Below are positions 5,969 to 47,464 of a DNA stretch of 64,000 nt, piece by piece. The translations under genes and the position numbers were made by a program. Each line of letters opens with the position of its first letter. Positions within the stretch are counted from its first letter, which is position 1. Where the stretch lies: IMG/VR virus record IMGVR_UViG_3300042514_000542, positions 1-64,000 of that record, one strand, 5' to 3'. The notes under the pieces were generated by a model that was given only the letters and a program-made list of their open reading frames with translations, searched no databases and was not told where the DNA came from.

Positions 5969-6853
5969 ATGAAGAAAAATCTAAAAAGTTTATTCAGTGA
6001 AGACGTTCAGAAAGTTCTGACCGAAGAAACCCTTACTGCTATCGAAGAAGCATTTAATGACAAGGTTAAATTGTCCGTTGATGCTGCCCTTATCGAACAG
6101 GATGATATCTATGCGGAAAAGCTCGAAACTCTTGTAACCACTCTCGATACCGATAGAGCGAAGAAGATGAAGAGAGTTGTTGAAGCTGTCGATAAATCAA
6201 ATGCATCTAAACTAGTTAAAATTGTTAAGATGTATGAAAGAGATTCTAAGGTTGAAGCTAAGAAGTTTAAAAAAGTTATGGTTGAATCTATCAGCGCATA
6301 TCTTGATGAATTTCTTAAAGAATCTGTCAATCAAAAAGATATCGAACAGGCAGTTAAAAATAAGACCGCATTTAATGTTCTAGAAAATTTACGCAATGTT
6401 CTCGCGGTTGATTCTGTCATGATGAAAGAATCCGTTCAAGAGGCTGTGATTGATGGTAAATCACAAATCACAAAACTTCAAAAAGAAAATGCTGAACTCA
6501 AGAAACAGTTCAAAGCACTTTATGAGCAAAATCAAAAAACTGAAGTTGGATCATTACTTGAATCCAAAATCTCCAAGTTCCCAGAATCTAAAAAAGGATT
6601 CCTTAAGAGAGCATTAGCTGATAAGTCAGTGAAGTTCATTGAAGAGAACTTTGATTATACCGTTCGCCTCTTTGATAAACAAGAAAAATCAAAACTTCAA
6701 ACCTTAAAAGAAGACGCTATTAATAAGCGTGAAATTAAACCCGATTTTGTAACTTCCTTCAAAAAAGAAAAAGTTATAGAAGAAAAGGTAAATAATAACA
6801 GTCTTAAGAATGATTACCTTAGTGTCCTCTCTCGCGGGAAAGGTACTAAATAA
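5969..6853 (+). CDS. gp22: Prohead core scaffolding protein (T4 gp22-like)
   Basis: Coiled-coil, E/K-rich, 294 aa, immediately upstream of the major capsid gene. Confidence 0.8.
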   Translation: MKKNLKSLFSEDVQKVLTEETLTAIEEAFNDKVKLSVDAALIEQDDIYAEKLETLVTTLDTDRAKKMKRVVEAVDKSNASKLVKIVKMYERDSKVEAKKFKKVMVESISAYLDEFLKESVNQKDIEQAVKNKTAFNVLENLRNVLAVDSVMMKESVQEAVIDGKSQITKLQKENAELKKQFKALYEQNQKTEVGSLLESKISKFPESKKGFLKRALADKSVKFIEENFDYTVRLFDKQEKSKLQTLKEDAINKREIKPDFVTSFKKEKVIEEKVNNNSLKNDYLSVLSRGKGTK

Positions 6854-8467: not shown

Positions 8468-10432
8468 CTAAATCTTAATCTCGCCCATATACCCTATACA
8501 TTTTTCAATGTGATTGATAACTTTACCCTGTTCTTCTCTGATATCCAGCAACAATTCACTTTTTTCTATATTTGATGGTTCGCCAGATTCCCTTAATTTT
8601 CGGACCAATTCAAATACATCAGTAATTTTCCACAATCTTTTTGTTTCATTTTTATAGTTCACTAAATCTACATTGAATGTTCTCTTAAACCATTCGTAGA
8701 AAATCTTAAATTTAGCATCTGTATACCTTTCATCCCTCTTGAAATAATATGTGTTGTTATCTCCAGCCATTATAATAAATCTATATATTCTCTCGAATGC
8801 ATTAACTGTAGATCTTAGATCGTAAAACAGACCTCCAATCGCTAAGTTTTCCCACTCCACAACCTTCAGTGGAGTTATAACCTCTAAAGATTGTAAATGT
8901 ATATTTGCACTAGAATTCCAAGTCGTAAAAGAATTAAGAGCCGATTTATATAATTCTAATGCTTCATTAATGTCATTTATTTTTTTAGTATCATATGCTT
9001 GCCAATCATAAGTGGAACATATTTTATATAAATTATATCTTAATACTTTATAGTCTATATTCTGTAACCATGGTAATGAATACTTAATAGTGTCGTATAT
9101 GTAGTCTTCATCTGGTTCATATTTATCTTCATATCCATGAATCTGAATATTCGCATCAATTTCAATCTCAATACCATCACCCAATGAATTAACCGTAACC
9201 CTCGGTGAACCGTCGTTGAAATTTCTACCCATATTACCCTTTAAGTGTGAAAATATTCCATGTGCTACAAGTTTCTCATACTCAGATGGGATATTATCTG
9301 ATGATGAATATATATCGTTTAAATATTCAAAAGGTTTGACTATATCTTTACCGAAATCGATTGTAATTTTCAACTCCACATTTACAACATGTCCATTATT
9401 GGTAGTGTCAAATGTTATTTGATTTCCTAATTCCTTTTCATTGTTTTGATTCAATAGTTCACTAACCACTTCGTCTGTTATTTCACTCCCAGTATTGAAC
9501 TCGAAATCAACTGGAGTATCTCCGTCATTATATAATTTTGGGTTCTTATATACTCTTTCACCACCAGTTAATTTTCTATTTAAATTTATAGACACCCACT
9601 CTTTTATATGCTGGTAAAATTCTGGATAATTAGATCCATATCTAGTTCCTACTGTATAAACCTTCCCTACATCAGAATTATGGGGTTTCATCAAAATCCT
9701 AGATAATGGTTTTTGAAGTTTACATTTAGGTTCCCCATTCGCAATATACATTTCATCTTCTGTTACAACATAAGCGACTAATGTTCCCTCATCAATATCT
9801 TGAGGTATATACTTTTTGTTTATTCCGGCCTTTTGTGCCGTCTTAGGATAATTAATTCGTTCTAGACCTAAATCCATACACGATGTCCAACTCCTGTCCG
9901 TAGATGCTCCAGCAATATCATATGGATGTCTGGAGATGACAATCACAAAATCCCCGTTAGATGATCGTATAGGATCATTTTTGAATTCGTGTAGTAATGG
10001 TTTACCTGTAACTGTTTTAGTTGTCTTTTTACCATCAACTCTGTGGGTGACTTCGATCTCCCCATCTTCTTCAAATTTTTGTAAAAGTTTTCCTATTTTA
10101 AGTGGATTTTTTCTGTCAACTTCTGTAGCGAAAGAAATCTCATCCACTATTTTATATTTATATGCAATACCCTTTATATAATCTTCCATACTATCTATTT
10201 GGTATTTTTTTTGGATTAAAAAATTTTCTATTTTTCTCTTTAATGGACTATCGATATTACTATAATCAATCTTCAAATTTCGAAATATTCTGTTTTTACC
10301 CTTAAAAATTTCATCTAATCTATCATTATATGCCCCAGAATACTTCTTGGATAGCATTTTTTTCTTGGCGTTTTTTAGGGAAATCGCTTCTGCTATAATA
10401 TAATGGTTTAATAATTCCTTGAATGAATCCAT
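8468..10432 (-). CDS. Large late protein with internal-protein-like N-terminus (MDSFKELLNHYIIAE)
   Basis: Start reassigned to ATG 10432, which lies 5 nt after TTAAATA. Contains ISRHPYDIAGAST..SWTSCM motif. Confidence 0.7.
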   Translation of the reverse strand: MDSFKELLNHYIIAEAISLKNAKKKMLSKKYSGAYNDRLDEIFKGKNRIFRNLKIDYSNIDSPLKRKIENFLIQKKYQIDSMEDYIKGIAYKYKIVDEISFATEVDRKNPLKIGKLLQKFEEDGEIEVTHRVDGKKTTKTVTGKPLLHEFKNDPIRSSNGDFVIVISRHPYDIAGASTDRSWTSCMDLGLERINYPKTAQKAGINKKYIPQDIDEGTLVAYVVTEDEMYIANGEPKCKLQKPLSRILMKPHNSDVGKVYTVGTRYGSNYPEFYQHIKEWVSINLNRKLTGGERVYKNPKLYNDGDTPVDFEFNTGSEITDEVVSELLNQNNEKELGNQITFDTTNNGHVVNVELKITIDFGKDIVKPFEYLNDIYSSSDNIPSEYEKLVAHGIFSHLKGNMGRNFNDGSPRVTVNSLGDGIEIEIDANIQIHGYEDKYEPDEDYIYDTIKYSLPWLQNIDYKVLRYNLYKICSTYDWQAYDTKKINDINEALELYKSALNSFTTWNSSANIHLQSLEVITPLKVVEWENLAIGGLFYDLRSTVNAFERIYRFIIMAGDNNTYYFKRDERYTDAKFKIFYEWFKRTFNVDLVNYKNETKRLWKITDVFELVRKLRESGEPSNIEKSELLLDIREEQGKVINHIEKCIGYMGEIKI

Positions 10433-19102: not shown

Positions 19103-19428
19103 GAAAAAGTTTAACAAGTTTGTATGAGAAGATGCTCGATTCGGGTATAGAGGAAACTATTGTCGAAGAATCTAATACGTTTTCTAAATTTGATTTAAAG
19201 GATTATACTGAAATAATTTATGAAGGTAAGTCGGGTCATGGTGATGTAAAAGCGGTTACTAATATGATGAAGGATGCTGAGTCTAAAGGGTTGATTAAAA
19301 TAAAAGATACCAAAAAAGGATGGATGTTATTTTCGACTCAAAACCCACAAATGAAAGAAACCATTGATCGTGGTGAGAGGGCATTACACTATCTTAGGAG
19401 ATTTCTTCAGAAAGTGGGATATAAATGA
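19099..19428 (+). CDS. Hypothetical late protein
   Basis: ATGA overlap with the upstream gene. Confidence 0.65.
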   Translation: MRKSLTSLYEKMLDSGIEETIVEESNTFSKFDLKDYTEIIYEGKSGHGDVKAVTNMMKDAESKGLIKIKDTKKGWMLFSTQNPQMKETIDRGERALHYLRRFLQKVGYK

Positions 19429-20489
19429 AATCCTTTAAAGAATTTTATCTTTCAGAGAACACCTTCAAAAGTGTTGATGACAGTATTAATTACGATCCTG
19501 AACAACTTAGGATGGGGATAGCCATTGAGAAGGAACATACTACGGATGCTAAGACTGCTGAAATTATTGCAAAGCATCATTTGGCGGAAGACCCGAAGTA
19601 TTATACTAAACTCAAGAAGATGGAATCGGGATTTAAAGAATCCTACCTATCCGAAATGGCACTATCCAACTTACAAAAGATTGGACAGTGGGATAATAAG
19701 AAAAATCGACATGGGTATGATAAACAATCCATTGGAATTCTAAGTTCGCCATCTGGACTTAGAAAGTTAGAGCAAAAATTTAATAGAATTGGTAATTGGG
19801 ATTTTAATTTATATTTTCTAAAAAATACCAATGCTTGGAAAGAAAATGAAACTGGGATGGTTACACCCCAAGAGTTAGAGAGACGATTGGGTTTAACGGT
19901 CGGTAAAGATTTTCCAACACCAGACGAGAATGATATTACAATTATCTTCACTGGTAATGCTGCTGCGGAAAGAGTTCCCCTAACACCTTGGACTATTGCT
20001 CATAGGATCGGACATTCTTTTGCAGCAACCTTTCGTAGAAAATATAATGATAACTCTATAGAATACTTTGAAAAAGAAATCAACAATTCCCTAATAGGTA
20101 TTTTAAAAGCTTATGGAGTTGACACTGATAGATATAGAGGATTTAGTTCAAGAGATATAATTTATAGTAATGACTACGTAGTTAGAAATTTATTAGAGTC
20201 TATTGGTAAGTTTCGTAGTGCTAGAATGAAGAAGTTACCCAGAACAGGTGAGTTCATATATGAATGTTTTGCTCAGTATCTATTATCCGATGGCGAACTT
20301 TCGTTCAACGATCCCCCAAGATTTTTAAAATCTAGTAATAAAAAAGCTTGGGGAAATGAAATCGGGGGAACTTACAGACTTCAGGATGAAGATACTGCCA
20401 ACGAATACATTCAACAATTAGGAATTAATTATTCGGAATTATTCAACTACTATCTAGGTTCTCACATCGAAACTATTTCGATAATGTGA
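19425..20489 (+). CDS. Putative internal head protein (MKSFKEFYLSE) with DUF5661-like domain
   Basis: QLRMGIAIEKEHT....A.IIA.HHL.EDP.YYTKL motif; N-terminus resembles the T4 IP capsid-targeting sequence. Confidence 0.65.
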   Translation: MKSFKEFYLSENTFKSVDDSINYDPEQLRMGIAIEKEHTTDAKTAEIIAKHHLAEDPKYYTKLKKMESGFKESYLSEMALSNLQKIGQWDNKKNRHGYDKQSIGILSSPSGLRKLEQKFNRIGNWDFNLYFLKNTNAWKENETGMVTPQELERRLGLTVGKDFPTPDENDITIIFTGNAAAERVPLTPWTIAHRIGHSFAATFRRKYNDNSIEYFEKEINNSLIGILKAYGVDTDRYRGFSSRDIIYSNDYVVRNLLESIGKFRSARMKKLPRTGEFIYECFAQYLLSDGELSFNDPPRFLKSSNKKAWGNEIGGTYRLQDEDTANEYIQQLGINYSELFNYYLGSHIETISIM

Positions 20490-37535: not shown

Positions 37536-38174
37536 GTGGAATCATTCGCACTATATTATGAAAAATTTTCTCTAAATCCAAGAAATTGGTTTATGAGTAA
37601 AGAAGAGAAGTTGAGGATAAGAGAACAAGATATTGAAATGCGTAAAGTCGCAATGCGACACGCTAGAGAAAACTTCAAAAAGATGAAAGACCTTTTGGCT
37701 TCAAAAGGTTATAGAATTCACAAGCACGACTTTTCTTATACTGTTAGGGGTGATAAGAAGGTGGGGATGGAACCTCCAAGACGAGATAAAATTAAGATTG
37801 GTGATCGTCAACTAGACATCCCATATCTCAAAACATTGTTTACAATGGCACATGAAGTTGGACATGTCTTACAATGGGATGATTCGACTAATAATAAACA
37901 TAAATTTGATGAGTTTTATTTATCTCAACTACGTGCTGAAATAGATAATGGTTATAATCATAGATTAAATCTGGAACATATACACAAAGTTTGGTATGAA
38001 TTAGATGCTTGGATTCAGGGTATGCAATTTATACCTATGGAATATAAACAAATATATAAAAAGTATGCATTTGATGCATATAAAACATATATGAATAGAG
38101 GTCCGAAGTATTATTATAATGATATGCTTCTTAGAACCCTATTAATTAAATTGAATGCTAAAGACCACTTTTAA
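37536..38174 (+). CDS. HExxH zinc metallopeptidase-like late protein
   Basis: TMAHEVGH...ELDAW; ATAAATA-N5-GTG; N-terminus MESFALYYE. Confidence 0.65.
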   Translation: MESFALYYEKFSLNPRNWFMSKEEKLRIREQDIEMRKVAMRHARENFKKMKDLLASKGYRIHKHDFSYTVRGDKKVGMEPPRRDKIKIGDRQLDIPYLKTLFTMAHEVGHVLQWDDSTNNKHKFDEFYLSQLRAEIDNGYNHRLNLEHIHKVWYELDAWIQGMQFIPMEYKQIYKKYAFDAYKTYMNRGPKYYYNDMLLRTLLIKLNAKDHF

Positions 38175-39660
38175 CATTCGGTATCATCTGTTTGGCTTTC
38201 TTATAAACCATCTGTTCCGTAATCTCTCTATTACTAAGTAACATTTCCGCAACCCAATCCTGTAATTTAGGAAGGTATAATCCCAATTGCTTTCTATCCG
38301 TTTGGAACTGTGGAAACCATTGCATTAACATATTCCCATTAATGATCGAGGAGATTCTCTTTTTGAGTTCTTCACCACCACCGGGAATAACATTTAATTT
38401 AGCCTCGGCTCTTTCAATCTTATCTAAGAACTCCTGCTTATTGAAAAGACCTGGACCACGGGAGGCTTCATCGCAATATCCAACAGCTTTAATGGTTTCC
38501 CAAGCTGGGTTATGTATAATTCTTCTTAGAACTTTAAGACTTAGTTTATCCAGTCCATGAACATGCATATGGTTTGCTACCGCAGCTAAAATATTCTTCT
38601 TATCATCTGGCCCAAGTTTAGCAAAACGTAATCTCTTAAAGATATTCTCAACAATGGGAACACCAGCAGATTCATGGGAGTGATAATTGCTAAAACCATT
38701 TGGTTTGATCCCCCTAGTTGTAGCCTTTCCAAAATCGTGGAATAATACAGCGAGATTTATAACTGGATCTGTATATGGTGATACTCTTAAGCATTCATGT
38801 ATATGACCCAGAACTTGCGAATCTCCTTCTGGATGATGTGCTGGATCATGGTCAAAACCTTCCATATCTGTAAATTCTGGAAGAATATCATGTAGGATTC
38901 CTGCGTCTTGTAATTTTTTCAGGAAGTTTGATAGGGTTGGTCCAGACTTAGCAGCCTTATACATTTCTTGGGAAATGCTCTCCTGTGAAATTAATTTAGG
39001 ATTTAATAATAGGTGTTTTAATTCCTTGGCAGCTTCCAATGTATCTGGTTCAATATCAAAGTCCATCTTGGCAGCAAATCTAAAGACTCTAAGAAGTCTG
39101 GTAGCGTCTTCCTTAAATCTTTCCTTGGCATTGCCAACAGCACGGATTACCTTATTCTCAAGATCCTTTAAACCTCCTTGGTAGTCAACGATACGACCAT
39201 GATAATCCAGACCAAAACTATTGATTGTAATATCACGCCTTTTTGTATCAGTCTCAAAACTATCAACTTCTGTGGATATGTTTTGTTGTCTACCCATTGC
39301 CGTTTGAGCATCTTCTCTAAACTTTGCTAAATCGAATGCATAATTATTATATAAAATGGTGTATACTGGTTGAGTATCATTCTTTGATATGTTTCTCAAC
39401 TCGAAATGATTAGATAAATCATCAAAGGAAATATTAGTTGCCATATCGACATCATCGATCTCATTACCCATAAGAAGATCCCTTGGAACACCACCAACAA
39501 TATATATCTCCCCTGTTGGAAATAATCCCATGATTTTGGTCATTAGTTCAAGACCAACACGTAATTCCTCAGATGAAGCTAAGGCTTGCTCCCATTTATC
39601 GGAAAAGTCTTCTACATTGTAGTTTACACTCTCTTTAAAGAATTTTGAAAAGGTTATCAT
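38158..39660 (-). CDS. cca: Class II tRNA nucleotidyltransferase (CCA-adding type) with HD domain
   Basis: YIVGGVPRDLL...DVDMAT, RRDITINS, EDATRLLR (EDxxR template motif), HHPEGD and LFHDFGK; no obvious poly(A)-polymerase G[RK]RF signature. Confidence 0.88.
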   Translation of the reverse strand: MITFSKFFKESVNYNVEDFSDKWEQALASSEELRVGLELMTKIMGLFPTGEIYIVGGVPRDLLMGNEIDDVDMATNISFDDLSNHFELRNISKNDTQPVYTILYNNYAFDLAKFREDAQTAMGRQQNISTEVDSFETDTKRRDITINSFGLDYHGRIVDYQGGLKDLENKVIRAVGNAKERFKEDATRLLRVFRFAAKMDFDIEPDTLEAAKELKHLLLNPKLISQESISQEMYKAAKSGPTLSNFLKKLQDAGILHDILPEFTDMEGFDHDPAHHPEGDSQVLGHIHECLRVSPYTDPVINLAVLFHDFGKATTRGIKPNGFSNYHSHESAGVPIVENIFKRLRFAKLGPDDKKNILAAVANHMHVHGLDKLSLKVLRRIIHNPAWETIKAVGYCDEASRGPGLFNKQEFLDKIERAEAKLNVIPGGGEELKKRISSIINGNMLMQWFPQFQTDRKQLGLYLPKLQDWVAEMLLSNREITEQMVYKKAKQMIPNVKSGL

Positions 39661-39688
39661 ATAGTATTCTTATTTAATAAATAATAAG

Positions 39689-40090
39689 GTGAGGACAATC
39701 GAAGAAAGTAATAAAACTATGGGGAACTTGGTGGAAGAGGCTATGTTTTTTGGGAAAACAGGTTCTAAATCTAAAAATTCAGTATTGCGTAAAATTGAAA
39801 AGGATACCGAAAATTATTTAACGGATGGTGGTAGATTCCCATTAACGGACGAATTAAAAATCGAAGTCAATGATGCTCATGGTTTGGCTGGGGTATTATC
39901 CCCTAGTGGACAGAAGGCTAGTTTAAGACTCATAGATGAATTACAGGGGGGTGTTTCTTTGGAGCTTAAGATTAGCACGGATGGGGCATGGAGAATACTC
40001 AACAAGGGTCAAGTTGTTGGTGGTGGGGAAGACCTAGACGAACGTGTGGTGTGGGATGCTTGGCTTGGGGAATTACTAAAGAATTACTAA
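39689..40090 (+). CDS. Hypothetical late protein
   Basis: ATAAATA-N5-GTG; divergent from cca. Confidence 0.6.
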   Translation: MRTIEESNKTMGNLVEEAMFFGKTGSKSKNSVLRKIEKDTENYLTDGGRFPLTDELKIEVNDAHGLAGVLSPSGQKASLRLIDELQGGVSLELKISTDGAWRILNKGQVVGGGEDLDERVVWDAWLGELLKNY

Positions 40091-40626
40091 TGATAACATT
40101 TAAAGCATTTTTTGAGTCTTTCAAGAGTTCGGGCATCGACATGAATCGTGCCTATGAGGTCTTCAACCAAGAATACCAAAAGTCAACAGGTAAATCTTGG
40201 GATAAGGGTAAATTTTTAAGCAGGGCGCAGAATTGGGACTTCTATGGCGATGATAATGGATTTATAACTGCTCGCCAACAAAAGAGTGGATTTGTTAAAC
40301 TTGTTGGTGCTGCTGGTTCCGATAAATCAAAATATAAAGGATTTAAGGAACTTGCATCAAAACATCTACCAGTTTGGGGTATGGTAGATGATAAACTATT
40401 TGAACTTCTCACTAAGTTGGGATATCGGGGTCCAAACAAAATCGAACTCTTTATGTTTAAGAAGATGATGACACCTGAAAAGATGGCTAGTGTTTTGGGT
40501 GGTGCTGTCATCAATAATATTGAAGGAAATAAAGTTACACTCACATATCCTGATATTGGAACTGTTACAAAATATTATATAGCTTCTCCCGAATATTGGA
40601 AGAAGGTTAGAGGTAATATTATTTAA
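40090..40626 (+). CDS. Putative internal head protein (MITFKAFFES)
   Basis: Start reassigned to the TAATG-coupled ATG at 40090. Confidence 0.65.
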   Translation: MITFKAFFESFKSSGIDMNRAYEVFNQEYQKSTGKSWDKGKFLSRAQNWDFYGDDNGFITARQQKSGFVKLVGAAGSDKSKYKGFKELASKHLPVWGMVDDKLFELLTKLGYRGPNKIELFMFKKMMTPEKMASVLGGAVINNIEGNKVTLTYPDIGTVTKYYIASPEYWKKVRGNII

Positions 40627-43600
40627 ATTTTTACATCATGGAACATAGTTCCCGCCTTTGCTGTGTCGGCCACCCATTGGTCAAATCCTTTTATTGTGTC
40701 TGTATATGGCTCATCGTAAACTTGCCAACCATTAGTATCTTTAGAATATTCTTGAATCTTATAATTTGATGAGTTAACATCTAATACAACGTATTTTATA
40801 TCACCGGATGTCGTCAAAAAGGTATCACCAATTGAATACTTTGGTTTATATGCTGCTTGCTTTTTAGCTGCCACTTTTACCTTGGCGAATCTTGAGATTT
40901 TGAACATCGATGTTACACCATTATCACCTTGTAATTCTACCAAATCAGAGAGGAGTAGTATTTTTCGAATAGTATATACCGCGCCAACAGTTAGTAAGTC
41001 CATCAACCCACTATTATCTAGACATTTAATCTTATCGCCAACAGATAACCCCTCCGTAGTTTGCAATGGTTTGGGTTTAGGTTGAGTAGGAAGAGGTTTT
41101 TGGCTTCCTATATCTGCCCCTGCCGTAAGCTGTTTGAGTTGTGCTTTTAAGTCTTCAAGGTCAGCTTCATGATCTTCATTATCGGTTTCTAATGGTTCTG
41201 AGTGAGAACCTTCATCATTTGTATCTGTTGGTGATTCTAATTTTTTTGCGAACCTATAGAATTCAAATCCACCCACATTACCAGTATTTGATATTACTCT
41301 TATATATTTATTGGAAGTAGATTGCACAATGTATGATTTTCCCTTGGATAAGAGATTCTCATAATCTTCGTTATCTACACATATAACAGTATCACCAACA
41401 CTGAGATCAATAGTTGATTCGAGAGGTGTAAGGTTTAACTCATTCATTATATCTTCTATGGGTTCCCATTCTGTATCATCGGAGGGTTTTGGAATTTCTT
41501 TACCTAGAACAGATTCATCCTTTTCGATCTTTTCAACATAGTTGAAATCTTCATATCTTGTAACACCACCCTGATCCTGATCCTGATCCATTTTGATCGT
41601 AACTTCTTTATAGAAATTGTTTACCGCTATAAGTGTTCCCCTTTTACCTTTAAATGATCCCTTAATGATTTTAACGTAATCCCCCACTTTGAAAGGTATT
41701 TCCTTCATAGGATTGTTATAATCATACTTGATTAGATCATTTGGATCAATACTTTTGTATTTACCAGTAATACTATCGTATACAGTAACATGGCCGGGGG
41801 TTTCGGAACTATCCTTGTAATATTCATACACATTACCATCTGGGTCTTCAACCTTATCATACCTTTCGAAAGGTTTATGAACAATCTTGATATCTTCTTT
41901 TAATTCGCTTTGACGAATCGGTGATATATCACCATCTTCCCATTCCACAGAATATATAGGATCGGTACGTTTCGCTCTTAATACATCACGAATAGATCCC
42001 ACTCTCCCATCTTGAGTTTTCACACTTGCGCCAACTTTAAATTTAGGTTTCCCACGGAAAACTGTCTTTAAAGTCTTTGATTTATTCATCACATCCGTTT
42101 GCGAATATTCATCCTTATATACTGTGGTTCCAAAATATTTAAACCAAATACCATCAAGTTTATCTTGAAATGATATTGGTATCTCTTTTCTATTATCAAT
42201 TAAAGACTCCTTAATAAATGATGCTAAATCACTATTTTCTCCATATAGAGAAAGAAGGGTATCTAAAAAAATCTCTTTACTTCCACGATATATATGGCTA
42301 TTCCACATAATTGGCATAATAGCAGCGACATATTCATTTCTACCCTTCATCATAGGTAATAATCGAATCAGTTGTTCTATGATGAGGTCTTCTTCATATA
42401 TATAGTTGTCAGTTCCTATTCCCAAGGATAGATAAACTACAAACTCATGTAACTTGTCCTTAATATATTCATCAGGTAATTTTTTCATCACCCTTGACAT
42501 AACACCCATCGTATTGGTGGGGGAATTTCTTCTTGTTGATGACACATGTAATATCTCTTCAAAGTGCCTCAAAGTTGAGGGACTTATATTATATGCAAGT
42601 TTCTGTAATATTGTTGATAGGTTTTCGTCAGTTAGAGACGATATATAAGTATGATCTAGAACATAATCCATATGTGTACCTAAGTAGTTATTGGTGATAA
42701 ACTCGAATACATCATTACCTATAAACTTATCATCAATTTCTGGCTCTTTTGATAAAAAAATACCTATGAGTTTGGCTATATCACCACCTCCCAATCCCGA
42801 GCGGGGTAGCTCAATCATGAGATCAGGGTTCCCCTCATATGCCATCATGATAAGTCTAAATGTCTTACTATCCTTGATTGCTTCCCTCACATTGGGTTTG
42901 ATCTTATCTTCATTACCCTTTTGAAACCTATCTAAGAGATATGCACGGAGAGTGGCATTTTTTTGAACTACGTCACCACTGTCTTCGTGACCCCAATCAA
43001 CATATGAAGATAAACGTTTCGATTTTTCGATTTTTCGTCTATCGACATGATCCAGTTCTACAATCAAGGAATTGACCCAAATAACACCCTGCCACGGCTC
43101 GTTTTCATGGATTGTCGATTCTCCCAAGTCGTCTATCATACCATCATAGAATCTCATTAGGATTCTTGTCCACATAATGGGTGGTCTGGTTTTGGTTTCC
43201 CTTAGTTTTCCATCATCGTCAGGAAATACTTGGGTTCGATTAAAGCTTTGAGCCAATGCTCTAGTGACCGTCCAAAACTTTTGGAAAGGGGTTTTCTGAT
43301 AAGATAATGGTGTGTCCAAGAGAATACCTTCAGGATCATATTTATATTCTGGAAACATCTCTCTCAATTTTTCAAAATCTCTTTCTAGATCCTGTTCAGA
43401 GTAGGTTGATGATCTGGCACATCTTTCTGGATTCCTTGGTTTATATATCCAAATGATGGGACGTTCAATGGCAAAGTGCGCTTTCCCCACACTTAACCAA
43501 TTATCCCAATAAACCTTTAAAGGAAACCCATAAATTCCAATTGGTGTACTAAAGCTTGAGTGGGGGTTAATACCTAATCTCTTAGTCTTTTTATCAAAAG

Positions 43601-43787
43601 ACTTTTTACGATTTAATTTTCGTTTATCACCATATGGAAGGGGTTCAGGTTCTTTCATAACCCTTGGCTCCAGAATATTAGCAAATGATACCAATACATC
43701 AGGGTCATCCTTGTATTTGGATAGAACAGCAAAGGGACTTTGGTTCCTTTCACATATGACTTCGAATATATCCTCAAAACGGGGCAT
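40623..43787 (-). CDS. Large late protein with multiple C-terminal SH3/KOW-like modules
   Basis: TPIGIYGFPL and IHENEPWQ motifs; repeated (F/L)xVGDxV modules; GTAAATA-N5-ATG. Confidence 0.7.
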   Translation of the reverse strand: MPRFEDIFEVICERNQSPFAVLSKYKDDPDVLVSFANILEPRVMKEPEPLPYGDKRKLNRKKSFDKKTKRLGINPHSSFSTPIGIYGFPLKVYWDNWLSVGKAHFAIERPIIWIYKPRNPERCARSSTYSEQDLERDFEKLREMFPEYKYDPEGILLDTPLSYQKTPFQKFWTVTRALAQSFNRTQVFPDDDGKLRETKTRPPIMWTRILMRFYDGMIDDLGESTIHENEPWQGVIWVNSLIVELDHVDRRKIEKSKRLSSYVDWGHEDSGDVVQKNATLRAYLLDRFQKGNEDKIKPNVREAIKDSKTFRLIMMAYEGNPDLMIELPRSGLGGGDIAKLIGIFLSKEPEIDDKFIGNDVFEFITNNYLGTHMDYVLDHTYISSLTDENLSTILQKLAYNISPSTLRHFEEILHVSSTRRNSPTNTMGVMSRVMKKLPDEYIKDKLHEFVVYLSLGIGTDNYIYEEDLIIEQLIRLLPMMKGRNEYVAAIMPIMWNSHIYRGSKEIFLDTLLSLYGENSDLASFIKESLIDNRKEIPISFQDKLDGIWFKYFGTTVYKDEYSQTDVMNKSKTLKTVFRGKPKFKVGASVKTQDGRVGSIRDVLRAKRTDPIYSVEWEDGDISPIRQSELKEDIKIVHKPFERYDKVEDPDGNVYEYYKDSSETPGHVTVYDSITGKYKSIDPNDLIKYDYNNPMKEIPFKVGDYVKIIKGSFKGKRGTLIAVNNFYKEVTIKMDQDQDQGGVTRYEDFNYVEKIEKDESVLGKEIPKPSDDTEWEPIEDIMNELNLTPLESTIDLSVGDTVICVDNEDYENLLSKGKSYIVQSTSNKYIRVISNTGNVGGFEFYRFAKKLESPTDTNDEGSHSEPLETDNEDHEADLEDLKAQLKQLTAGADIGSQKPLPTQPKPKPLQTTEGLSVGDKIKCLDNSGLMDLLTVGAVYTIRKILLLSDLVELQGDNGVTSMFKISRFAKVKVAAKKQAAYKPKYSIGDTFLTTSGDIKYVVLDVNSSNYKIQEYSKDTNGWQVYDEPYTDTIKGFDQWVADTAKAGTMFHDVKI

Positions 43788-43819
43788 ATGATTATTTACC
43801 CAAATTATTAAATATGTAT

Positions 43820-44269
43820 ATGGTTTTTAACAAGACTTATAGAAAATTAATGGAATATTACGAACCATCGGGAATTCTTCTAGAAGGTGTTCTTAATTCT
43901 GTTCCAAGAGATCTTTTAGGTATGGAAACCTCCTATGAGAACTTTCCCATAAAAGCACCTTATGGTTTCTGGGTAGATCGTAGTGGTAACTGGATAACTG
44001 TTCCATATATCGGTCACAGTCCAACGGCTCTCGGCATTATAAGAAAGGCCAATAAATACCTAGTGGAAAAAGGTATGGAACGAGTGGAAGATTATAGTCC
44101 CTATAAACCTCTTTATAGTGAAGGTTGGATGAGAGTTCAGTTGACAACAGGCACAGTCTTCTACGAATTCAAACCAGCAAACCAGATAGCAACGACACCC
44201 CAAAACAGATTTTTGGAGATGTGTAAGGAGATGTATAATATTCCAAATGCTGAAAATGATAGCGATTAA
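43820..44269 (+). CDS. Hypothetical late protein
   Basis: TTAAATA upstream; PYGFWVD.SG...H...GWMRV. Confidence 0.65.
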   Translation: MVFNKTYRKLMEYYEPSGILLEGVLNSVPRDLLGMETSYENFPIKAPYGFWVDRSGNWITVPYIGHSPTALGIIRKANKYLVEKGMERVEDYSPYKPLYSEGWMRVQLTTGTVFYEFKPANQIATTPQNRFLEMCKEMYNIPNAENDSD

Positions 44270-44276
44270 TTCCAAT

Positions 44277-45350
44277 ATGATAACATTTAAACATTACATA
44301 ATACGAGAGGGTAAGCTCAAGGATTCAAAGAAAGTATTGAAATTGGGTGATTATCCAATGTTTACCGTTTTTATCGCCAAGGGGGATAATATCTCTGAAA
44401 GACTTATGGCATATAAAGAAAACGAGGATTATTATTCCAAGGCATTTGAACTTGCTAGAGAGAGAATTACGAGGCTGGGTCTTCCCTCCATGCATGTCAA
44501 TGTGGTGTTTAAGGACACGCCCGATGCTTATGGATTGGCTCATGGAAATCCAGACACTAAAACGAGTGTGGTTAGGTCTGTATCATTGAGTGTAAGATTT
44601 ATTGATTTTGGATCAAGACCGAGCATGGACAATATAAAGTATTCATTCTCTGCGTTGGTAGATACGATAGTTCATGAATGGGCGCATATGTGGATGTTCA
44701 ATAATGGAAAGGCTTTTCGTGATGCAATCAAACAGTATCACGAAGCATTGGTATATTCGAACATAGATAAAATACCATATAACTATGGTGATACTGAAAG
44801 AATATTCACCACATTCTATAAAGATATTGCAATTCTTTTTAAGACATATAAATTTAATCTTAAAGAAAACCCACAATATATGTCCCTAAAGAGCGTCAGA
44901 AAGGATATGCAACGTATTTTCTTAGACACTCTAAATGAATATGGTATGTATGCTCTTGCCGTAGATAAGGATGTATTGAATCCATATATAGATAAAATAT
45001 CTGATATAGTTTACCATAATGTGGGGAAGAATCCCAAATCTGTTTTTAAGTATATTGAAAGTTTAAATTTGGAAAAAGTGTTTGAGGGACAGATTAAACA
45101 GGAGACACAACGAAGCATTTCCAAGAGATCCGATATTAGAAAACAATTATCAGATATGATTAAATTTACTGGAGCATATGGAATGACAAATCCCGATGAA
45201 GCATGGGCAACCGCTATTGAAAAATTCAAGATACTAGATCCATACCATAAAAAAAGAATTCGTGAACTGATGCAAGTAAAAGGTCAAAGAGAACTCCCCA
45301 ATAGAAGAATGCAGAAACATCTTAATATGGTGAATAATCTTGACAACTAA
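44277..45350 (+). CDS. HExxH metallopeptidase-like putative internal protein (MITFKHYIIRE)
   Basis: IVHEWAH ... YGMTNPDEAWA zincin-type pattern. Confidence 0.7.
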   Translation: MITFKHYIIREGKLKDSKKVLKLGDYPMFTVFIAKGDNISERLMAYKENEDYYSKAFELARERITRLGLPSMHVNVVFKDTPDAYGLAHGNPDTKTSVVRSVSLSVRFIDFGSRPSMDNIKYSFSALVDTIVHEWAHMWMFNNGKAFRDAIKQYHEALVYSNIDKIPYNYGDTERIFTTFYKDIAILFKTYKFNLKENPQYMSLKSVRKDMQRIFLDTLNEYGMYALAVDKDVLNPYIDKISDIVYHNVGKNPKSVFKYIESLNLEKVFEGQIKQETQRSISKRSDIRKQLSDMIKFTGAYGMTNPDEAWATAIEKFKILDPYHKKRIRELMQVKGQRELPNRRMQKHLNMVNNLDN

Positions 45351-45365
45351 TATAGTCATGGTATC

Positions 45366-45689
45366 ATGTTACACATGACTACAGTGGTTCACATCAATGA
45401 TCCATACGACATCTATATAGGTCGTCCTTCAATTTGGGGCAATCCGCATAGTCATTTACCCGAAAGTGCCGCAGAATACATCGTAGCGACTCGAAAAGAA
45501 GCCATAGAGAAGTATCGGGAATACATTCTAAACAGTAACTATCTAATGTCAAGGTTACACGAACTCGATGGAAAGGTTCTTGGATGCCACTGTAAACAAA
45601 AAGGTAAAAATGTTCCTTGCCACGGAGACGTATTAGTAGAGCTTATCGAAAAAATGAACTATACTAAGGTTGATTTGGAAGATTTTTAA
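45366..45689 (+). CDS. DUF4326-like protein
   Basis: YIGRPSIWGNP...LDGKVLGCHC...CHGDVL; TTGACA...TATCAT promoter upstream. Confidence 0.8.
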   Translation: MLHMTTVVHINDPYDIYIGRPSIWGNPHSHLPESAAEYIVATRKEAIEKYREYILNSNYLMSRLHELDGKVLGCHCKQKGKNVPCHGDVLVELIEKMNYTKVDLEDF

Positions 45690-47464
45690 ATCCTCAGTTC
45701 TTGGGTGAAGTAATCTATAGCAGCCTCACTATCGTAGTCATCAAATCCATAATATGGAACATCCATATCACCTTCAATTTCGGGGTCGGGATCGAATGGG
45801 TCACTATCATGCTCAATAGACAACCCAATTGAATCTATACTAAATTTAGCAAGCAGAGGACTATCATACCAATGATCACTATTTTCAAAGACCACACTGA
45901 AAGAATGGTCTATTGTATCTGATAAAACATCCGTTTCTTGTGGAATAAATATCAAAGACTCTATACCGGATTTAAAATACTTAACCAGTTGTGAGTATGT
46001 TCCACTTTCATACCCAGCACGGATAGCATCCCTTAACGTATCAATCGTATCAGGATCATTTACTTTCAGAAGAGTATATACATCCTTTATAGTTATATCT
46101 GACGGGTCGATATCCAATTCTTCTAATAAGTCTGGATATTCAGTAATCCATTCTTTTACTGCTTCCATTATTCTAAAATTGACAACATTGTTTCCCATCA
46201 CACGTTCCAACAAATCTATTAAATCTTCTTCTGGCGCACGGTAATCCATATCCTCAGTTAAATTTTTATCCCCCGATATATAGTCACCATATGAATATAG
46301 ATTTGGTGGTTGGTAGGTGTCAACAAGCTCATTCCAATTTTCCCATACCCTATAATAGATAAAATTATCTTTCAATTGAATTTTAGCCATAATCTCTTCG
46401 GGAGTGCTATACTGAGCATGTCCCCCGCCCGATCCCGATATGAAAAGGTTTGCAATTTCTCTTTTAATATCATCCTCTCCCATTAATCCCAATTTTACCT
46501 TTTCGGTAAATGGAAGTAGGTCTGGTCTTAATTCACGTATCTTTTGTTGTCTTTCCTCTGATAGTTCTCTGAATTTAAATAATTCTGGTCTTAGTCTAAA
46601 TAACATTTCCGATTGTTCTTCAGAGAGATCGGATATATCGAAGTTGTTATCGGCGGCATAACCACCCCCAACAATACGTTTAATTAAATAGTCTTCACCA
46701 TCACCTCTACTACTGGTATTAACCTTATATGTTAATAATTTTAGAATGTGTGGATGATACTTTGGATTGGGCTTTTCATTTGCCCTCCCCTTCATTTCCC
46801 CAAGGGTGCTATTATCATTCAGAATGAAGGTCAGGGATGGTCTAGCAAAAACCCTACCACCCTGTTTCACCACCTTCCTCAAAGATAATACAGTATCCGT
46901 ATCTCTGGCACTGGCGGTATTACCACAATGACCCATAGCACCTCCCTCGATCTTACAAGACCTTCTATCCAAATCAAACCAAACAAATCCATCATCAAAC
47001 TTTATAAGTTCAGAAATGGAGCCATCCACCAATTCATCAGTAATATCGATCCATTGTTCCCTATCAGTCTTCCACTCACTCTCCCAATCTCTAAACTTTA
47101 AGAGTGCTTCAGTTACACCATCTCTATAATCATATCTTTGAATCTTATTTATGGGTAAAGAGAGATAATGTTCTAAGCTATTTAGAGTCTGCCTAGCTAG
47201 ATTTATTTGCTGTGTGGGGAAAGAATCAGCCCTCGTCAATTCTTTTAATATGGAAGTCCTTACAGATTTGAGAAACCAAACCACAATATTATCCTTCTTA
47301 AGAACTCCAATACTTCTCTGAACGATATCGTTCAGATTTTTCGAAAGTGTATCGTCCTGTTCCAATACTTTCCCGAACATTTGCATATATCTCTCAGTTC
47401 TAGCTTTGACACCCTCTTCCAGAACATGGAGATATATTTGATAGAATTTCGAAAATGTTAACAT
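45686..47464 (-). CDS. Putative internal protein (MLTFSKFYQIYLHVLEE) with PcfJ-like motif
   Basis: EGGAMGHCG...LSLR...EMKGRAN.KP; TTAAATA upstream. Confidence 0.65.
   Translation of the reverse strand: MLTFSKFYQIYLHVLEEGVKARTERYMQMFGKVLEQDDTLSKNLNDIVQRSIGVLKKDNIVVWFLKSVRTSILKELTRADSFPTQQINLARQTLNSLEHYLSLPINKIQRYDYRDGVTEALLKFRDWESEWKTDREQWIDITDELVDGSISELIKFDDGFVWFDLDRRSCKIEGGAMGHCGNTASARDTDTVLSLRKVVKQGGRVFARPSLTFILNDNSTLGEMKGRANEKPNPKYHPHILKLLTYKVNTSSRGDGEDYLIKRIVGGGYAADNNFDISDLSEEQSEMLFRLRPELFKFRELSEERQQKIRELRPDLLPFTEKVKLGLMGEDDIKREIANLFISGSGGGHAQYSTPEEIMAKIQLKDNFIYYRVWENWNELVDTYQPPNLYSYGDYISGDKNLTEDMDYRAPEEDLIDLLERVMGNNVVNFRIMEAVKEWITEYPDLLEELDIDPSDITIKDVYTLLKVNDPDTIDTLRDAIRAGYESGTYSQLVKYFKSGIESLIFIPQETDVLSDTIDHSFSVVFENSDHWYDSPLLAKFSIDSIGLSIEHDSDPFDPDPEIEGDMDVPYYGFDDYDSEAAIDYFTQELRI

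What the first reader, a model, noticed from the sequence alone, without database searches (positions are those of the whole stretch)
37536..47464. Island of late proteins with T4 internal-protein-like capsid-targeting N-termini
Seen: unrelated proteins share an M-x-(T/S/R)-F-x-x-(F/Y/L/I)...E N-terminus: MITFSKFFKE (cca), MITFKAFFE (40090), MITFKHYIIRE (44277), MLTFSKFYQIYLHVLEE (47464), MESFALYYE (37536) and MPRFEDIFEVICE (43787). Outside the island are MKSFKEFYLSE (19425) and MDSFKELLNHYIIAE (10432). All lie behind TAAATA late promoters or in late operons. Established: T4 IPII/IPIII carry the capsid-targeting peptide MKTYQEFIAE, which gp21 removes after Glu. Inference: a large cargo set (two HExxH peptidases, a PcfJ-like protein, an SH3-repeat protein, a nucleotidyltransferase) is packaged and injected with the DNA, plausibly for host takeover or anti-defence.
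Basis: partly seen in the sequence, partly recalled or inferred. Interest (0 to 1): 0.82.

Follow-up and report, generated by a model that had tools for sequence, protein, structure and literature searches.

The report
Capsid-targeting leaders on late phage proteins
In an uncultured T4-like lake phage, eight or nine unrelated late proteins, among them a tRNA CCA-adding enzyme and two zinc-peptidase-like proteins, start with a short T4-style tag that most likely loads them into the capsid for injection with the DNA; the mechanism is known from T4, the cargo and the lineage are new.

Summary
Eight N-termini fit M-x-x-F-x-x-[FYLIM][FYLIM] followed by hydrophobic-x-Glu, against 0.13 expected. All eight sit behind TAAATA-N5-ATG late promoters or inside late operons; none of 22 early genes has the motif. 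A ninth protein (43820) carries a shifted variant. The window is the first 64 kb of a 206.6-kb uncultured T4-like lake phage with a gp21-type prohead protease.

Comparative data support a detachable N-terminal tag. In four cargo families the leader varies in length and sequence but ends in Glu directly before the conserved mature start. In fusion proteins it stays at the extreme N-terminus. Codons vary while residues are kept. The first 50 residues of the CCA enzyme are absent from all cultured-phage and bacterial homologues. The conserved positions 4, 7, 8 and 10 are those that target and process the T4 capsid-targeting sequence.

Best reading (about 0.75): T4-type capsid targeting and Glu-specific trimming of an enzymatic cargo set. 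Packaging and injection were not shown here.

Position 3 (T/S/R) is not constrained. 'PcfJ-like' and 'peptidase' remain leads. This is a new member of a known kind. The new elements are the predicted virion-borne CCA-adding enzyme and the wide spread of MK[TS]FKEF starts in T4-like phages.

The parts
37536..38174 (+). HExxH protein, 212 aa, GTG start. Leader MESFALYYE | KFSLNP. Predicted mature form 24.8 kDa, pI 9.6.
   Evidence: All 32 homologues keep the leader, the (K/A/E/G)FSLNP boundary and HExxH. TAAATA box at 37525-37530, spacer 5.
38158..39660 (-). tRNA nucleotidyltransferase of the CCA-adding/repair type (PolyA_pol head + HD), 500 aa. Leader MITFSKFFKE | SVNYN. Residues 1-50 are a clade-specific extension.
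   Evidence: Pfam PF01743 1.2e-23 and HD; NCBIfam PRK10885 aligns from residue 51; PDB 1miv from residue 51; 286 cultured-phage homologues all start at residue 51-53; leader kept in 120 homologues. TAAATA at 39671-39676, spacer 10.
39689..40090 (+). First gene of a late operon, 133 aa, GTG start, no class-1 leader (MRTIEESNKTMGNLVEE|A is only a possible site). Its stop overlaps the ATG of the next gene.
   Evidence: TAAATA at 39678-39683, spacer 5. No family hit.
40090..40626 (+). 178-aa protein of unknown function. Leader MITFKAFFE | SFKSS. Predicted mature form 19.2 kDa, pI 9.6. Operon-internal, so it has no promoter of its own.
   Evidence: No relatives in the 11 related islands.
40623..43787 (-). 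1054-aa protein. Leader MPRFEDIFEVICE | RNQSP. N-terminal about 320-aa domain of a very large uncharacterised family; C-terminal SH3/KOW-like beta-barrel repeats.
   Evidence: 819 cluster representatives. The Glu ending the leader is invariant in a 34-sequence alignment, A2. AF2 pLDDT 82; best PDB match is a cyanophage A4 pre-ejectosome chain, E 0.015, not significant. TAAATA at 43793-43798.
43820..44269 (+). 149-aa protein with a shifted variant leader, MVFNKTYRKLMEYYE | PSG.
   Evidence: TAAATA at 43809-43814, spacer 5, points to the second ATG. Homologous to the N-terminal domain of CCA fusion protein P0084, which starts MIYFNKLYKKLTE.
44277..45350 (+). HExxH protein, 357 aa. Leader MITFKHYIIRE | GKLKDS. 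Predicted mature form 40.5 kDa, pI 9.4.
   Evidence: In 31 homologues the leader is 9-19 aa long and always ends hydrophobic-x-E before G(K/R)F(R/K)xS; H133, E134 and H137 are invariant. AF2 pLDDT 86 with residues 1-11 below 50. Weak zinc-metallopeptidase fold matches.
45366..45689 (+). DUF4326 protein, 107 aa, no leader. Last gene of the 43820 operon.
   Evidence: PF14216 5.7e-19; phrog_464.
45686..47464 (-). 592-aa acidic protein (pI 4.6). Leader MLTFSKFYQIYLHVLEE | GVKAR.
   Evidence: The L082 orthologue (39% identity) starts MDDFHKYFYKRQRLIEE | GVKQR behind TAAATA. The PcfJ-like resemblance is a lead only; no Pfam hit. TAAATA at 47471-47476, spacer 6.
8468..10432 (-). 654-aa protein next to the major capsid gene. 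Leader MDSFKELLNHYIIAE | AISLKNAKKK.
   Evidence: Orthologues L019 (MRRFEDLLSHYLMSE|AISLKNAKKK) and L025 (MISFKLFFEQYMLNE|AFSLKQARKK). TAAATA at 10438-10443, spacer 5, supports the 10432 start rather than 10486.
19425..20489 (+). 354-aa fusion of DUF5661 (residues 1-70) and a second domain (78-354). Leader MKSFKEFYLSE | N, plus an internal second leader-like site MESGFKESYLSE | MALSNLQKIG.
   Evidence: PF18905 8.1e-14. The parts occur as separate genes in relatives. The L009 orthologue of the C-terminal part starts MVKLSQLDLLRE | MPLINMQKIG.
4837..5505 (+). gp21-type prohead protease, the presumed processing enzyme. Its own N-terminus is MALKLKLISE | N.
   Evidence: phrog_207 1.1e-51. 35% identity to T4 gp21, with GELNHP and GVSTRALGS conserved. 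N-terminal site kept in most relatives.
5969..6853 (+). Scaffold-like protein, gp22-like by position only, the presumed docking partner. N-terminus MKKNLKSLFSE | D.
   Evidence: Lies between the protease and the capsid gene behind a late promoter. LF[ST]E|[DE] is conserved in 26 variants. No significant similarity to T4 gp22 and no PHROG hit.
6914..8365 (+). gp23-type major capsid protein with a predicted maturation site WCLEE(56) | AGTS.
   Evidence: phrog_138 1.4e-79. 27% identity to T4 gp23. WC[ILFVM]xE | [AS][GN] is conserved in 40 variants.

Best explanation
The short N-terminal leaders are capsid-targeting sequences of the T4 kind.

Proposed mechanism: late in infection the leader (aromatic residue at position 4, hydrophobic pair at 7-8) docks each protein onto the scaffolding core while the prohead assembles. 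The gp21-type prohead protease then cuts after the Glu that ends the leader (hydrophobic-x-Glu). This is the same kind of site predicted in the capsid protein, the scaffold and the protease itself. The mature proteins stay in the head with the DNA and enter the next host cell with it.

Predicted cargo in this window: a CCA-adding/repair tRNA nucleotidyltransferase, two HExxH (zinc-peptidase-like) proteins, a 120-kDa protein with a widespread uncharacterised N-domain and SH3/KOW-like repeats, and proteins of 654, 592, 354 (DUF5661 fusion), 178 and probably 149 aa.

Shown here: the motif, its restriction to late genes, its modularity, the conserved boundary, and the presence of the protease. Inferred: docking, cleavage, packaging and injection.

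A plausible rationale for the CCA enzyme: its gene has only a late promoter, yet 16 of the 23 phage tRNA genes lack an encoded CCA. Enzyme carried in the virion would be active from the first minute of the next infection, for tRNA maturation or repair.
For: (1) Motif statistics and class restriction: 8 against 0.13-0.26 expected; 0 of 22 early genes.

(2) Match to T4. IPII/III MKTYQEFIAE|A, IPI MKTFKEF...ITE|A, Alt MELITELFDE|D and gp24 MAKINELLRE|S were read from NC_000866. The review PMC9026906 states that targeting depends on residues 4 and 7 and processing on residues 8 and 10. In 37 register-aligned CCA homologues F/Y4 is 37/37, position 7 hydrophobic 36/37, position 8 36/37 and E10 32/37.

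(3) gp21-type protease present, 35% identical to T4 gp21. The same hydrophobic-x-E sites are conserved in the capsid protein, scaffold and protease of 26-40 relatives.

(4) Propeptide-like boundary in four independent families. The leader varies in length and sequence, but its Glu abuts the conserved mature start: HExxH-357, HExxH-212, the 654-aa and 592-aa proteins and the 1054-aa family, where that Glu is invariant.

(5) Modularity. In Nudix-CCA and other fusion proteins the leader stays at the extreme N-terminus. A second leader class, MKNKDQILLExLYxxIxxE, sits on five or six neighbouring genes including the CCA gene in another lineage, and on HExxH homologues.

(6) Constraint at protein level, not nucleotide level. 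Ser, Thr and Arg codons of all kinds occur at position 3 and both Phe codons at position 4. Operon-internal genes without a promoter carry the leader.

(7) The CCA extension (residues 1-50) is absent from PDB, NCBIfam, PHROG and 286 cultured-phage homologues.

(8) Cargo genes other than CCA are hypervariable among relatives and among lake strains, as T-even IP loci are.

(9) AF2 predicts the leader of HExxH-357 as low-confidence and detached.

(10) MK[TS]FKEF starts are common in IMG/VR: 65 of 83 matches lie at ORF starts, and 30 of 80 loci carry T4 core genes.
Against: No virion proteome, N-terminal peptide or expression data for this phage; no RNA run was listed.

The motif was defined post hoc, and looser versions match unpackaged T4 proteins such as lysozyme.

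T4 internal proteins are small and basic. Several predicted cargoes here are large and acidic (120 kDa pI 5.5; 66 kDa pI 4.6), although T4 Alt (682 aa) is a precedent.

Residues 11-50 of the CCA enzyme are also conserved, so part of the extension could be a structural element of this subfamily.

The DUF5661 protein of Caulobacter phage Cr30 starts MKDFKSFL but lies among early-type genes and has no nearby Glu boundary. In that family the N-terminus may therefore be part of the domain.

The scaffold assignment is positional only.
Confidence: 0.75

Rival explanations
1. The leader is a real, protease-removed propeptide, or a scaffold- or chaperone-binding tag, but it serves only assembly-time functions in the producing cell. 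Examples: transient recruitment to proheads, or zymogen control of the HExxH enzymes. The mature proteins are then expelled or degraded like scaffold fragments and are not delivered to the next host.
For: T4 core proteins gp22, gp67 and gp68 carry similar N-terminal sites and are degraded and lost. The scaffold and protease of this phage have similar N-termini. MKTFKEF-type small ORFs sit inside the head module of cyanophage-like contigs.
Against: The cargoes are folded enzymes of 20-120 kDa with conserved catalytic motifs and no scaffold-like features. In the leader regions examined, one conserved hydrophobic-x-E boundary sits next to the conserved mature start; internal sites were not surveyed. 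In T4, proteins with this architecture (the IPs and Alt) are retained and injected.
Confidence: 0.12
2. The shared N-terminus reflects a nucleotide-level requirement of the near-leaderless late mRNAs (promoter-proximal or translation-initiation signal), or a shared recombination cassette (promoter plus first codons). It is not a protein signal.
For: Promoters abut the start codons, so the first codons lie within the initiation region. Very similar leaders on neighbouring genes could promote cassette exchange.
Against: Other late genes with the same TAAATA-N5-ATG layout (protease, scaffold, baseplate) lack the motif. Operon-internal genes without a promoter have it. Codons differ while the residues are kept. 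Leader length varies, but the Glu boundary is fixed relative to the mature protein.
Confidence: 0.05
3. The leader directs the proteins elsewhere (membrane, periplasm or another compartment), or marks them for regulated degradation, with no relation to the capsid.
For: The leader is short with several hydrophobic and aromatic residues, so it could bind other partners. A ClpP-like protease is also encoded at 15248-15886.
Against: The leader has no signal-peptide features: it is 9-17 aa long, charged, and ends in Glu. It is nearly identical to the experimentally defined T4 capsid-targeting sequence. It co-occurs with T4-type head genes across IMG/VR.
Confidence: 0.05

Closest known systems
Phage T4 capsid-targeting sequence on internal proteins IPI, IPII, IPIII and on Alt, removed by prohead protease gp21 (Mullaney and Black 1996, as summarised in PMC9026906 and PMC3012670)
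   Same: A leader of 9-19 residues at the extreme N-terminus. Aromatic residue at position 4, hydrophobic at 7-8, cleavage-type hydrophobic-x-Glu at the end. Unrelated mature proteins share the tag. gp21-family protease and gp23-family capsid protein are present. The cargo loci are hypervariable. Alt is a precedent for a large enzymatic cargo.
   Different: The lineage is very distant: capsid protein 27% identical to T4 gp23, 31-33% to cyanophage gp23. No homologue of IPI-III or Alt was found. The cargo is mostly large and includes a CCA-adding enzyme and HExxH proteins. Phe is preferred over Tyr at position 4. At least two leader classes occur in the wider clade. Nothing has been tested experimentally.
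Propeptide-bearing ejection proteins of giant phages phiKZ, 201phi2-1 and SPN3US (PMC5694885)
   Same: A gp21-related protease cuts after Glu. N-terminal propeptides are inferred to target inner-head and ejection proteins, including enzymes such as the virion RNA polymerase.
   Different: Those propeptides are mostly longer than 100 residues and the cleavage motif is A/S/G-x-E. Here the leaders are 9-17 residues with a bulky hydrophobic residue at P3, as in T4.
Phage P1 Dar (defence against restriction) proteins packaged in the head (PMC9024508, PMC12810830)
   Same: Large anti-defence proteins are loaded into the capsid during assembly and injected.
   Different: From my own knowledge, not tested here: P1 loading is described as depending on a hierarchy of Dar/Hdf proteins and N-terminal regions, not on a gp21-cleaved decapeptide. 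No homology to Dar proteins was looked for or found here.

Membership tests
T4-type capsid-targeting sequence / internal-protein system | A gp21-family (S77) prohead protease is encoded by the phage | tested here: met
   4837-5505: phrog_207 1.1e-51. 35% identity to T4 gp21, with GELNHP and GVS(S/T)R(G/A)LGS conserved.
T4-type capsid-targeting sequence / internal-protein system | A leader of 10-19 residues at the extreme N-terminus, with targeting residues at positions 4 and 7 and processing residues at positions 8 and 10 (hydrophobic-x-Glu) | tested here: met
   Eight window proteins. In CCA homologues F/Y4 is 37/37, position 7 36/37, position 8 36/37 and E10 32/37. T4 reference sequences; functional positions from PMC9026906.
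T4-type capsid-targeting sequence / internal-protein system | The same leader sits on otherwise unrelated proteins (modular tag) | tested here: met
   Nine non-homologous window proteins. The leader is retained at the N-terminus of fusion proteins. New carriers appear in relatives.
T4-type capsid-targeting sequence / internal-protein system | A gp22-type scaffolding core to which the leader binds | tested here: inconclusive
   5969-6853 is scaffold-like by position, size and late promoter. It has no significant similarity to T4 gp22 (E 0.03) and no PHROG hit.
T4-type capsid-targeting sequence / internal-protein system | The leader is removed by the prohead protease after Glu | not testable with these tools
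   Indirect evidence only: a conserved Glu boundary in four families and the same type of site in the capsid protein and scaffold.
T4-type capsid-targeting sequence / internal-protein system | The mature proteins are present in virions and injected with the DNA | not testable with these tools
   No proteomic data. No RNA run was listed.
T4-type capsid-targeting sequence / internal-protein system | Expression at the time of head assembly | tested here: met
   By promoter class only. TAAATA-N5-ATG is shared with the protease, scaffold and baseplate genes: 17 matches against 4.2 expected. No early-type promoter precedes these genes.
Class II tRNA nucleotidyltransferase (CCA-adding/repair enzyme) | PolyA_pol head domain with GGxxRD and DxD motifs, plus a C-terminal HD phosphohydrolase domain | tested here: met
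   PF01743 1.2e-23 and PF01966 3.8e-07. The sequence reads IVGGVPRDLL...DDVDMAT and LFHDFGK. PRK10885 6.2e-40 over residues 51-383.
Class II tRNA nucleotidyltransferase (CCA-adding/repair enzyme) | Specificity for CCA addition, as opposed to A-adding or poly(A) polymerase activity | tested here: inconclusive
   All NCBIfam equivalog scores are below their cut-offs (155.7 against 290; 137.2 against 451). The best PDB relatives are CCA-adding enzymes.
MA-clan (gluzincin-like) zinc metallopeptidases, for the two HExxH proteins | A HExxH zinc-binding helix, a downstream third ligand, and the thermolysin-like fold | tested here: inconclusive
   HExxH is invariant in 31 and 32 homologues. In the 357-aa family a YHE about 21 residues downstream is present in the majority consensus. 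There is no Pfam or NCBIfam hit. Foldseek gives only sub-significant peptidase matches (best probability 0.90 over 126 columns, E 0.18). Atlas TM scores are 0.36-0.45.
PcfJ (PF14284), for the 592-aa protein | A significant match to the PcfJ profile | tested here: not met
   No Pfam hit even at E up to 5. Only Atlas feature and structure leads to clusters in which 21-26% of members carry PcfJ.

The most novel reading that the evidence does not exclude
An abundant, uncultured clade of T4-like lake phages delivers a pre-made enzyme kit with its DNA. The kit's conserved core is a CCA-adding/repair tRNA nucleotidyltransferase. This enzyme would mature the phage's own CCA-less tRNAs or repair tRNA 3' ends attacked by host defences before any phage gene is expressed.

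More broadly, the T4-type leader (and a second class, MKNKDQILLE...) would be a sequence tag that marks the injected proteome across the T4 superfamily. That proteome would include an uncharacterised effector family of 819 clusters whose leader Glu is invariant. Injected anti-defence and takeover proteins could then be mined directly from metagenomes.
Probability: 0.45. Interest if true: 0.78.

Novelty: new member of a known kind. Interest (0 to 1): 0.6.

Why it matters
Proteins injected with phage DNA act before any phage gene is transcribed. They are a main route for countering host defences, yet they are almost impossible to recognise in uncultured phages.

If the leader works as in T4, a 10-residue tag identifies the injected proteome from sequence alone. 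In this phage that gives a concrete, testable list: a tRNA CCA-adding/repair enzyme, two HExxH enzymes and a large multi-domain protein. I found no report of a virion-borne tRNA nucleotidyltransferase in the papers searched. It would link capsid cargo to the current interest in tRNA-targeting defences and phage tRNA sets.

The near-identity of the tag between T4 and a lineage whose capsid protein is only 27% identical also shows that the targeting mechanism is ancient and conserved. This supports its use as an engineering handle for protein delivery in other T4-like phages.

Tried and rejected
- **Nucleotide search:** megablast of the island against cultured phages found nothing.
- **Family searches:** Pfam, PHROG and NCBIfam searches of the unknown cargoes, even at lenient thresholds, gave no families.
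- **Stop-codon read-through:** the CTA-anticodon tRNA prompted a check for TAG read-through. No TAG-interrupted ORFs exist in the window.
- **Alt homology:** the 1054-aa protein shows no significant similarity to T4 Alt. A profile of its N-domain has no PDB sequence match. The fold search gave only a sub-significant hit to a cyanophage A4 pre-ejectosome chain and to PARP ART domains.
- **Cultured-phage homologues:** tblastn of that domain against cultured phages gave none, or only uncultured megaphage records.
- **Scaffold:** homology to T4 gp22 could not be shown.
- **654-aa protein:** the Atlas search was uninformative.
- **RNA runs:** none was listed, so transcript 5' ends and timing could not be checked.
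the T/S/R rule was rejected after seeing orthologues.
- **Relaxed regex:** rejected as a detector because it hits unpackaged T4 proteins.
- **Literature:** searches found the capsid-targeting sequence discussed only for T4 and T-evens, and long propeptides for giant phages. I found no survey of distant T4-like phages.

Full report
**What the window is.** The window is the first 64 kb of IMG/VR contig UViG_3300042514_000542 (206,590 bp). The same sequence occurs in lake-water metagenomes from many studies. It has no nucleotide match among cultured phages. It is clearly a T4-type myovirus:
- a gp23-type major capsid protein at 6914-8365 (phrog_138 1.4e-79; 31-33% identical to cyanophage gp23, 27% to T4 gp23);
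- a gp21-type prohead protease at 4837-5505 (phrog_207 1.1e-51; 35% identical to T4 gp21 with the His and Ser motifs kept);
- a scaffold-like gene between them;
- a gp4-like head-closure protein and baseplate genes;
- 23 tRNA genes.

More than 360 IMG/VR contigs encode a capsid protein related to this one, and the 80 kept are 72-100% identical. This is therefore a large uncultured clade.

**Check of the observation.** A stricter pattern derived from orthologues is M..F..[FYLIM][FYLIM] followed by hydrophobic-x-Glu by residue 17. It matches the same eight against 0.13 expected, and none of 367 internal methionines. These P values are post hoc. A relaxed pattern is unspecific, because in T4 it also hits lysozyme and gp2.

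**Promoter classes.** Two promoter classes directly abut the start codons:
- A late type, TAAATA plus 5 nt plus ATG/GTG. It occurs 17 times against 4.2 expected, with no shuffle reaching 17. It precedes the protease, the scaffold, baseplate genes and the leader-bearing genes at 37536, 43787 and 10432. The genes at 47464 and 39660 have the same box with spacers of 6 and 10 nt.
- An early type, ATTAATTAAAACCGAACTAnAAT plus 5-6 nt plus ATG.

Five of 18 late-promoter genes carry the motif. Three more (40090, 44277, 19425) are internal to late operons. None of 22 early-promoter genes carries it. The late box also fixes two starts. It places the 654-aa gene's start at 10432 rather than 10486. It places the neighbouring gene's start at 43820, whose product begins MVFNKTYRKLMEYYE. 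That is a shifted variant of the leader and a ninth candidate.

**Comparison with T4, using sequences fetched here.** T4 IPII and IPIII start MKTYQEFIAE|A. IPI starts MKTFKEFTSTTTPVSTITE|A. Alt starts MELITELFDE|D and gp24 starts MAKINELLRE|S. The review PMC9026906 reports that the first ten residues of IPIII suffice for encapsidation, that targeting depends mainly on residues 4 and 7, and that processing depends on residues 8 and 10. The window's leaders keep those positions: an aromatic residue at 4, hydrophobic residues at 7-8, and a Glu preceded by a hydrophobic residue two positions earlier. The start MKSFKEF (19425) differs from T4 IPI's MKTFKEF only by Ser for Thr at position 3.

**Evidence that the leader is a detachable, modular tag.**
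- *CCA enzyme (38158-39660).* This is a class II tRNA nucleotidyltransferase with an HD domain. Every outside reference aligns only from its residue 51-53: PDB 1miv, NCBIfam PRK10885, phrog_2244 and 286 cultured-phage homologues. The first 50 residues are therefore specific to this clade. Of its 120 best metagenomic homologues (56-92% identical), most start with a leader of this kind. Some have shifted or different leaders, and some are annotated from a later start. In 37 register-aligned sequences, position 4 is F/Y in 37, position 7 hydrophobic in 36, position 8 in 36, and position 10 Glu in 32. Position 3 is free (P, S, T, N, R, K).
- *Fusion proteins.* Where extra domains (Nudix, a 43820-like domain, others) lie ahead of the CCA domain, the leader remains at the very N-terminus.
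- *HExxH-357 family.* In 31 homologues the leader ranges from 9 to 19 residues and differs in sequence. It always ends hydrophobic-x-Glu immediately before the conserved mature start G(K/R)F(R/K)xS.
- *Other families.* The same holds for the HExxH-212 family (leader | (K/A/E/G)FSLNP, 32 homologues), the 654-aa protein (| A(I/F)SLK) and the 592-aa protein (| GVK).
- *The 1054-aa family.* It has 819 cluster representatives. In a 34-sequence alignment the only invariant columns in the first 24 are Met1 and the Glu that ends the leader.
- *Second leader class.* In another lineage (ENA scaffold, 166 kb), MKNKDQILLExLYxxIxxE heads five or six neighbouring genes, including the CCA gene. A related form heads HExxH homologues. 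Leader type therefore seems to follow the phage lineage rather than the cargo.
- *Codon usage.* The constraint is on the protein. Position 3 uses TCA, TCT, TCG, TCC, ACC, ACA, ACT, ACG, CGC, CGT and AGG, and position 4 uses both TTT and TTC.
- *Structure prediction.* The AlphaFold model of HExxH-357 is confident (pLDDT 86) except for residues 1-11.

**Protease sites elsewhere in the head.** The capsid protein has a conserved WC[ILFVM]xE|[AS][GN] after residue 56 in 40 sequence variants. The scaffold starts MKKNLKxLF[ST]E|D. The protease starts MALKLKLI[AS]E|N. These are the same kind of site as at the end of the leaders, and they parallel the T4 gp23, gp22 and gp21 sites.

**Plasticity.** Among 11 related contigs that hold the CCA gene with 10-kb flanks, the CCA gene and two small neighbours are always present. 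HExxH-212, the 39689 gene, the 178-aa gene and the 1054-aa gene are never present. HExxH-357 is present once and the 592-aa gene twice, one of those in L082, a locus outside this set. Other leader-bearing genes take their place. In one lake strain (run X3) the sequence is identical through the CCA gene, then about 5% diverged, and leaves the window inside the 1054-aa gene. This is the behaviour described for the T-even internal-protein loci.

**Cargo identities.**
- *CCA/repair-type nucleotidyltransferase.* The family assignment is secure. Its specificity is not settled, because all equivalog scores are below cut-off. Only 7 of the 23 phage tRNA genes encode CCA. The gene has only a late promoter, so carrying the enzyme in the virion would make functional sense. 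This rationale is an inference.
- *The two HExxH proteins.* Both keep HExxH in every homologue. They give only sub-significant fold matches to M1, M9, M30 and EryP-type zinc peptidases.
- *The 592-aa protein.* It is 'PcfJ-like' only by language-model and structural leads, with no profile match.
- *The 1054-aa protein.* It combines the widespread N-domain with SH3/KOW-like repeats that score below Pfam cut-offs. The N-domain's best PDB match is a cyanophage A4 pre-ejectosome chain at E 0.015, followed by PARP ART domains; neither is significant.
- *The 354-aa protein.* It is a fusion of DUF5661 with a second domain and contains an internal second leader-like site. The boundary of that site matches the N-terminus of the stand-alone orthologue.

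**How widespread the tag is.** In the 80 loci held, 65 of 83 matches sit at ORF starts, mostly followed by x-x-Glu. Thirty loci carry T4 core genes at 22-52% identity, and some matches lie inside the head module. One recurrent family is present, annotated as hypothetical, in cultured cyanomyoviruses such as P-TIM68 and S-N03. The papers I could search discuss the capsid-targeting sequence for T4 and T-evens, and long propeptides for giant phages. I found no survey of distant T4-like phages and no report of a virion-borne tRNA nucleotidyltransferase.

**Rivals.**
- *Nucleotide-level explanation (leaderless-mRNA signal or recombination cassette).* It is contradicted by codon variation, by leader-bearing operon-internal genes, and by late genes without the leader.
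- *Propeptide with an assembly-only role.* This cannot be excluded without proteomics. It fits poorly with folded enzymes that have a conserved hydrophobic-x-E boundary next to the mature start.
- *Targeting to another compartment.* This has no support.
- *Caveat for DUF5661.* The Caulobacter phage Cr30 homologue starts MKDFKSFL, lies among early-type genes, and lacks a nearby Glu boundary.

**Verdict.** The interpretation as a T4-type capsid-targeting leader is the best-supported explanation (about 0.75). Cleavage, packaging and injection are inferred, not shown. It is a new member of a known kind of system. Its points of interest are the cargo, above all the conserved CCA-adding enzyme, and the use of the tag as a marker of injected proteins in uncultured T4-like phages.

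Noticed in passing
window 28.9-30 kb and 48.8-63.6 kb (e.g. upstream of 49055, 50261, 53544, 59735): About 25 early genes are preceded by a long conserved box, ATTAATTAAAACCGAACTAnAAT, ending 5-6 nt before the ATG. Late genes have TAAATA 5 nt before the start. No Shine-Dalgarno sequence is visible. Both gene classes therefore seem to give leaderless or nearly leaderless mRNAs.
   Followed up: partly
window 23941-24013 (+): A tRNA with anticodon CTA (amber suppressor; ARAGORN labels it Pyl). TAG is the rarest stop (6 of 110 genes, including the CCA and 654-aa genes). No TAG-interrupted ORFs were found in the window.
   Followed up: partly
window tRNA genes 21470-32161 and 55502-56048: Only 7 of the 23 phage tRNA genes encode the 3' CCA. 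The other 16 need CCA addition, which fits the phage encoding its own nucleotidyltransferase.
   Followed up: yes
window 15248-15886 (-): A ClpP-family protease gene (PF00574, 1.4e-29) lies next to the ribonucleotide reductase genes. This is a second phage protease besides the gp21 homologue. Its role is unknown.
   Followed up: partly
window 47700-48700: A patch of up to 60% G+C in a 35% G+C genome, between the late island and the early region. It has overlapping ORFs on both strands (47708-48343 +, 47764-48132 -) and no family hits. It may be foreign DNA.
   Followed up: partly
window 25123-25719 (-): An HTH + HNH endonuclease gene with a late-type TAAATA-N5-ATG start sits inside the tRNA cluster. 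It is likely a homing endonuclease.
   Followed up: no
window 19425-20489, residues 66-78: The DUF5661 fusion protein has a second, internal leader-like segment, MESGFKESYLSE | MALSNLQKIG. Its boundary matches the N-terminus of the stand-alone orthologue in L009 (MVKLSQLDLLRE | MPLINMQKIG). This suggests a gene fusion that kept a second cleavage site.
   Followed up: partly
L100 8701-13932 and 17234-17611 (ENA ERZ19534870 scaffold_22): A different leader class, MKNKDQILLExLYxxIxxE, heads five or six neighbouring genes including the CCA gene. Class-1 leaders (MISFKEY...) occur in the same cluster.
   Followed up: partly
L102-L181 (IMG/VR); cultured cyanophages P-TIM68, S-N03, S-WAM1, P-RSM6: ORFs starting MK[TS]FKEFxxE are common in distant T4-like phages. 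A recurrent family (MKTFKEFLDESSLSRIKSKSDKGG...) is annotated as hypothetical in cyanomyoviruses. Small MKTFKEFAKNI... ORFs sit in loci that also hold gp19, gp20, gp21 and gp23 homologues.
   Followed up: partly
window 40623-43787, residues 1-330; P0185-P0333: The N-domain of the 1054-aa protein defines a family of 819 cluster representatives (187-2165 aa). It has conserved GINP...TPxGIYxYP and IHxNEPxQ motifs and no Pfam or PDB relative. Apart from the query's close relatives in the T4-like clade, the only members placed were in 735-kb uncultured megaphage records.
   Followed up: partly
window 40976-43400 in run X3: A lake strain is identical to the window through the CCA gene. It diverges by about 5% over 39444-40659 and leaves the window inside the 1054-aa gene, a strain-level mosaic at the cargo island.
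   Followed up: partly
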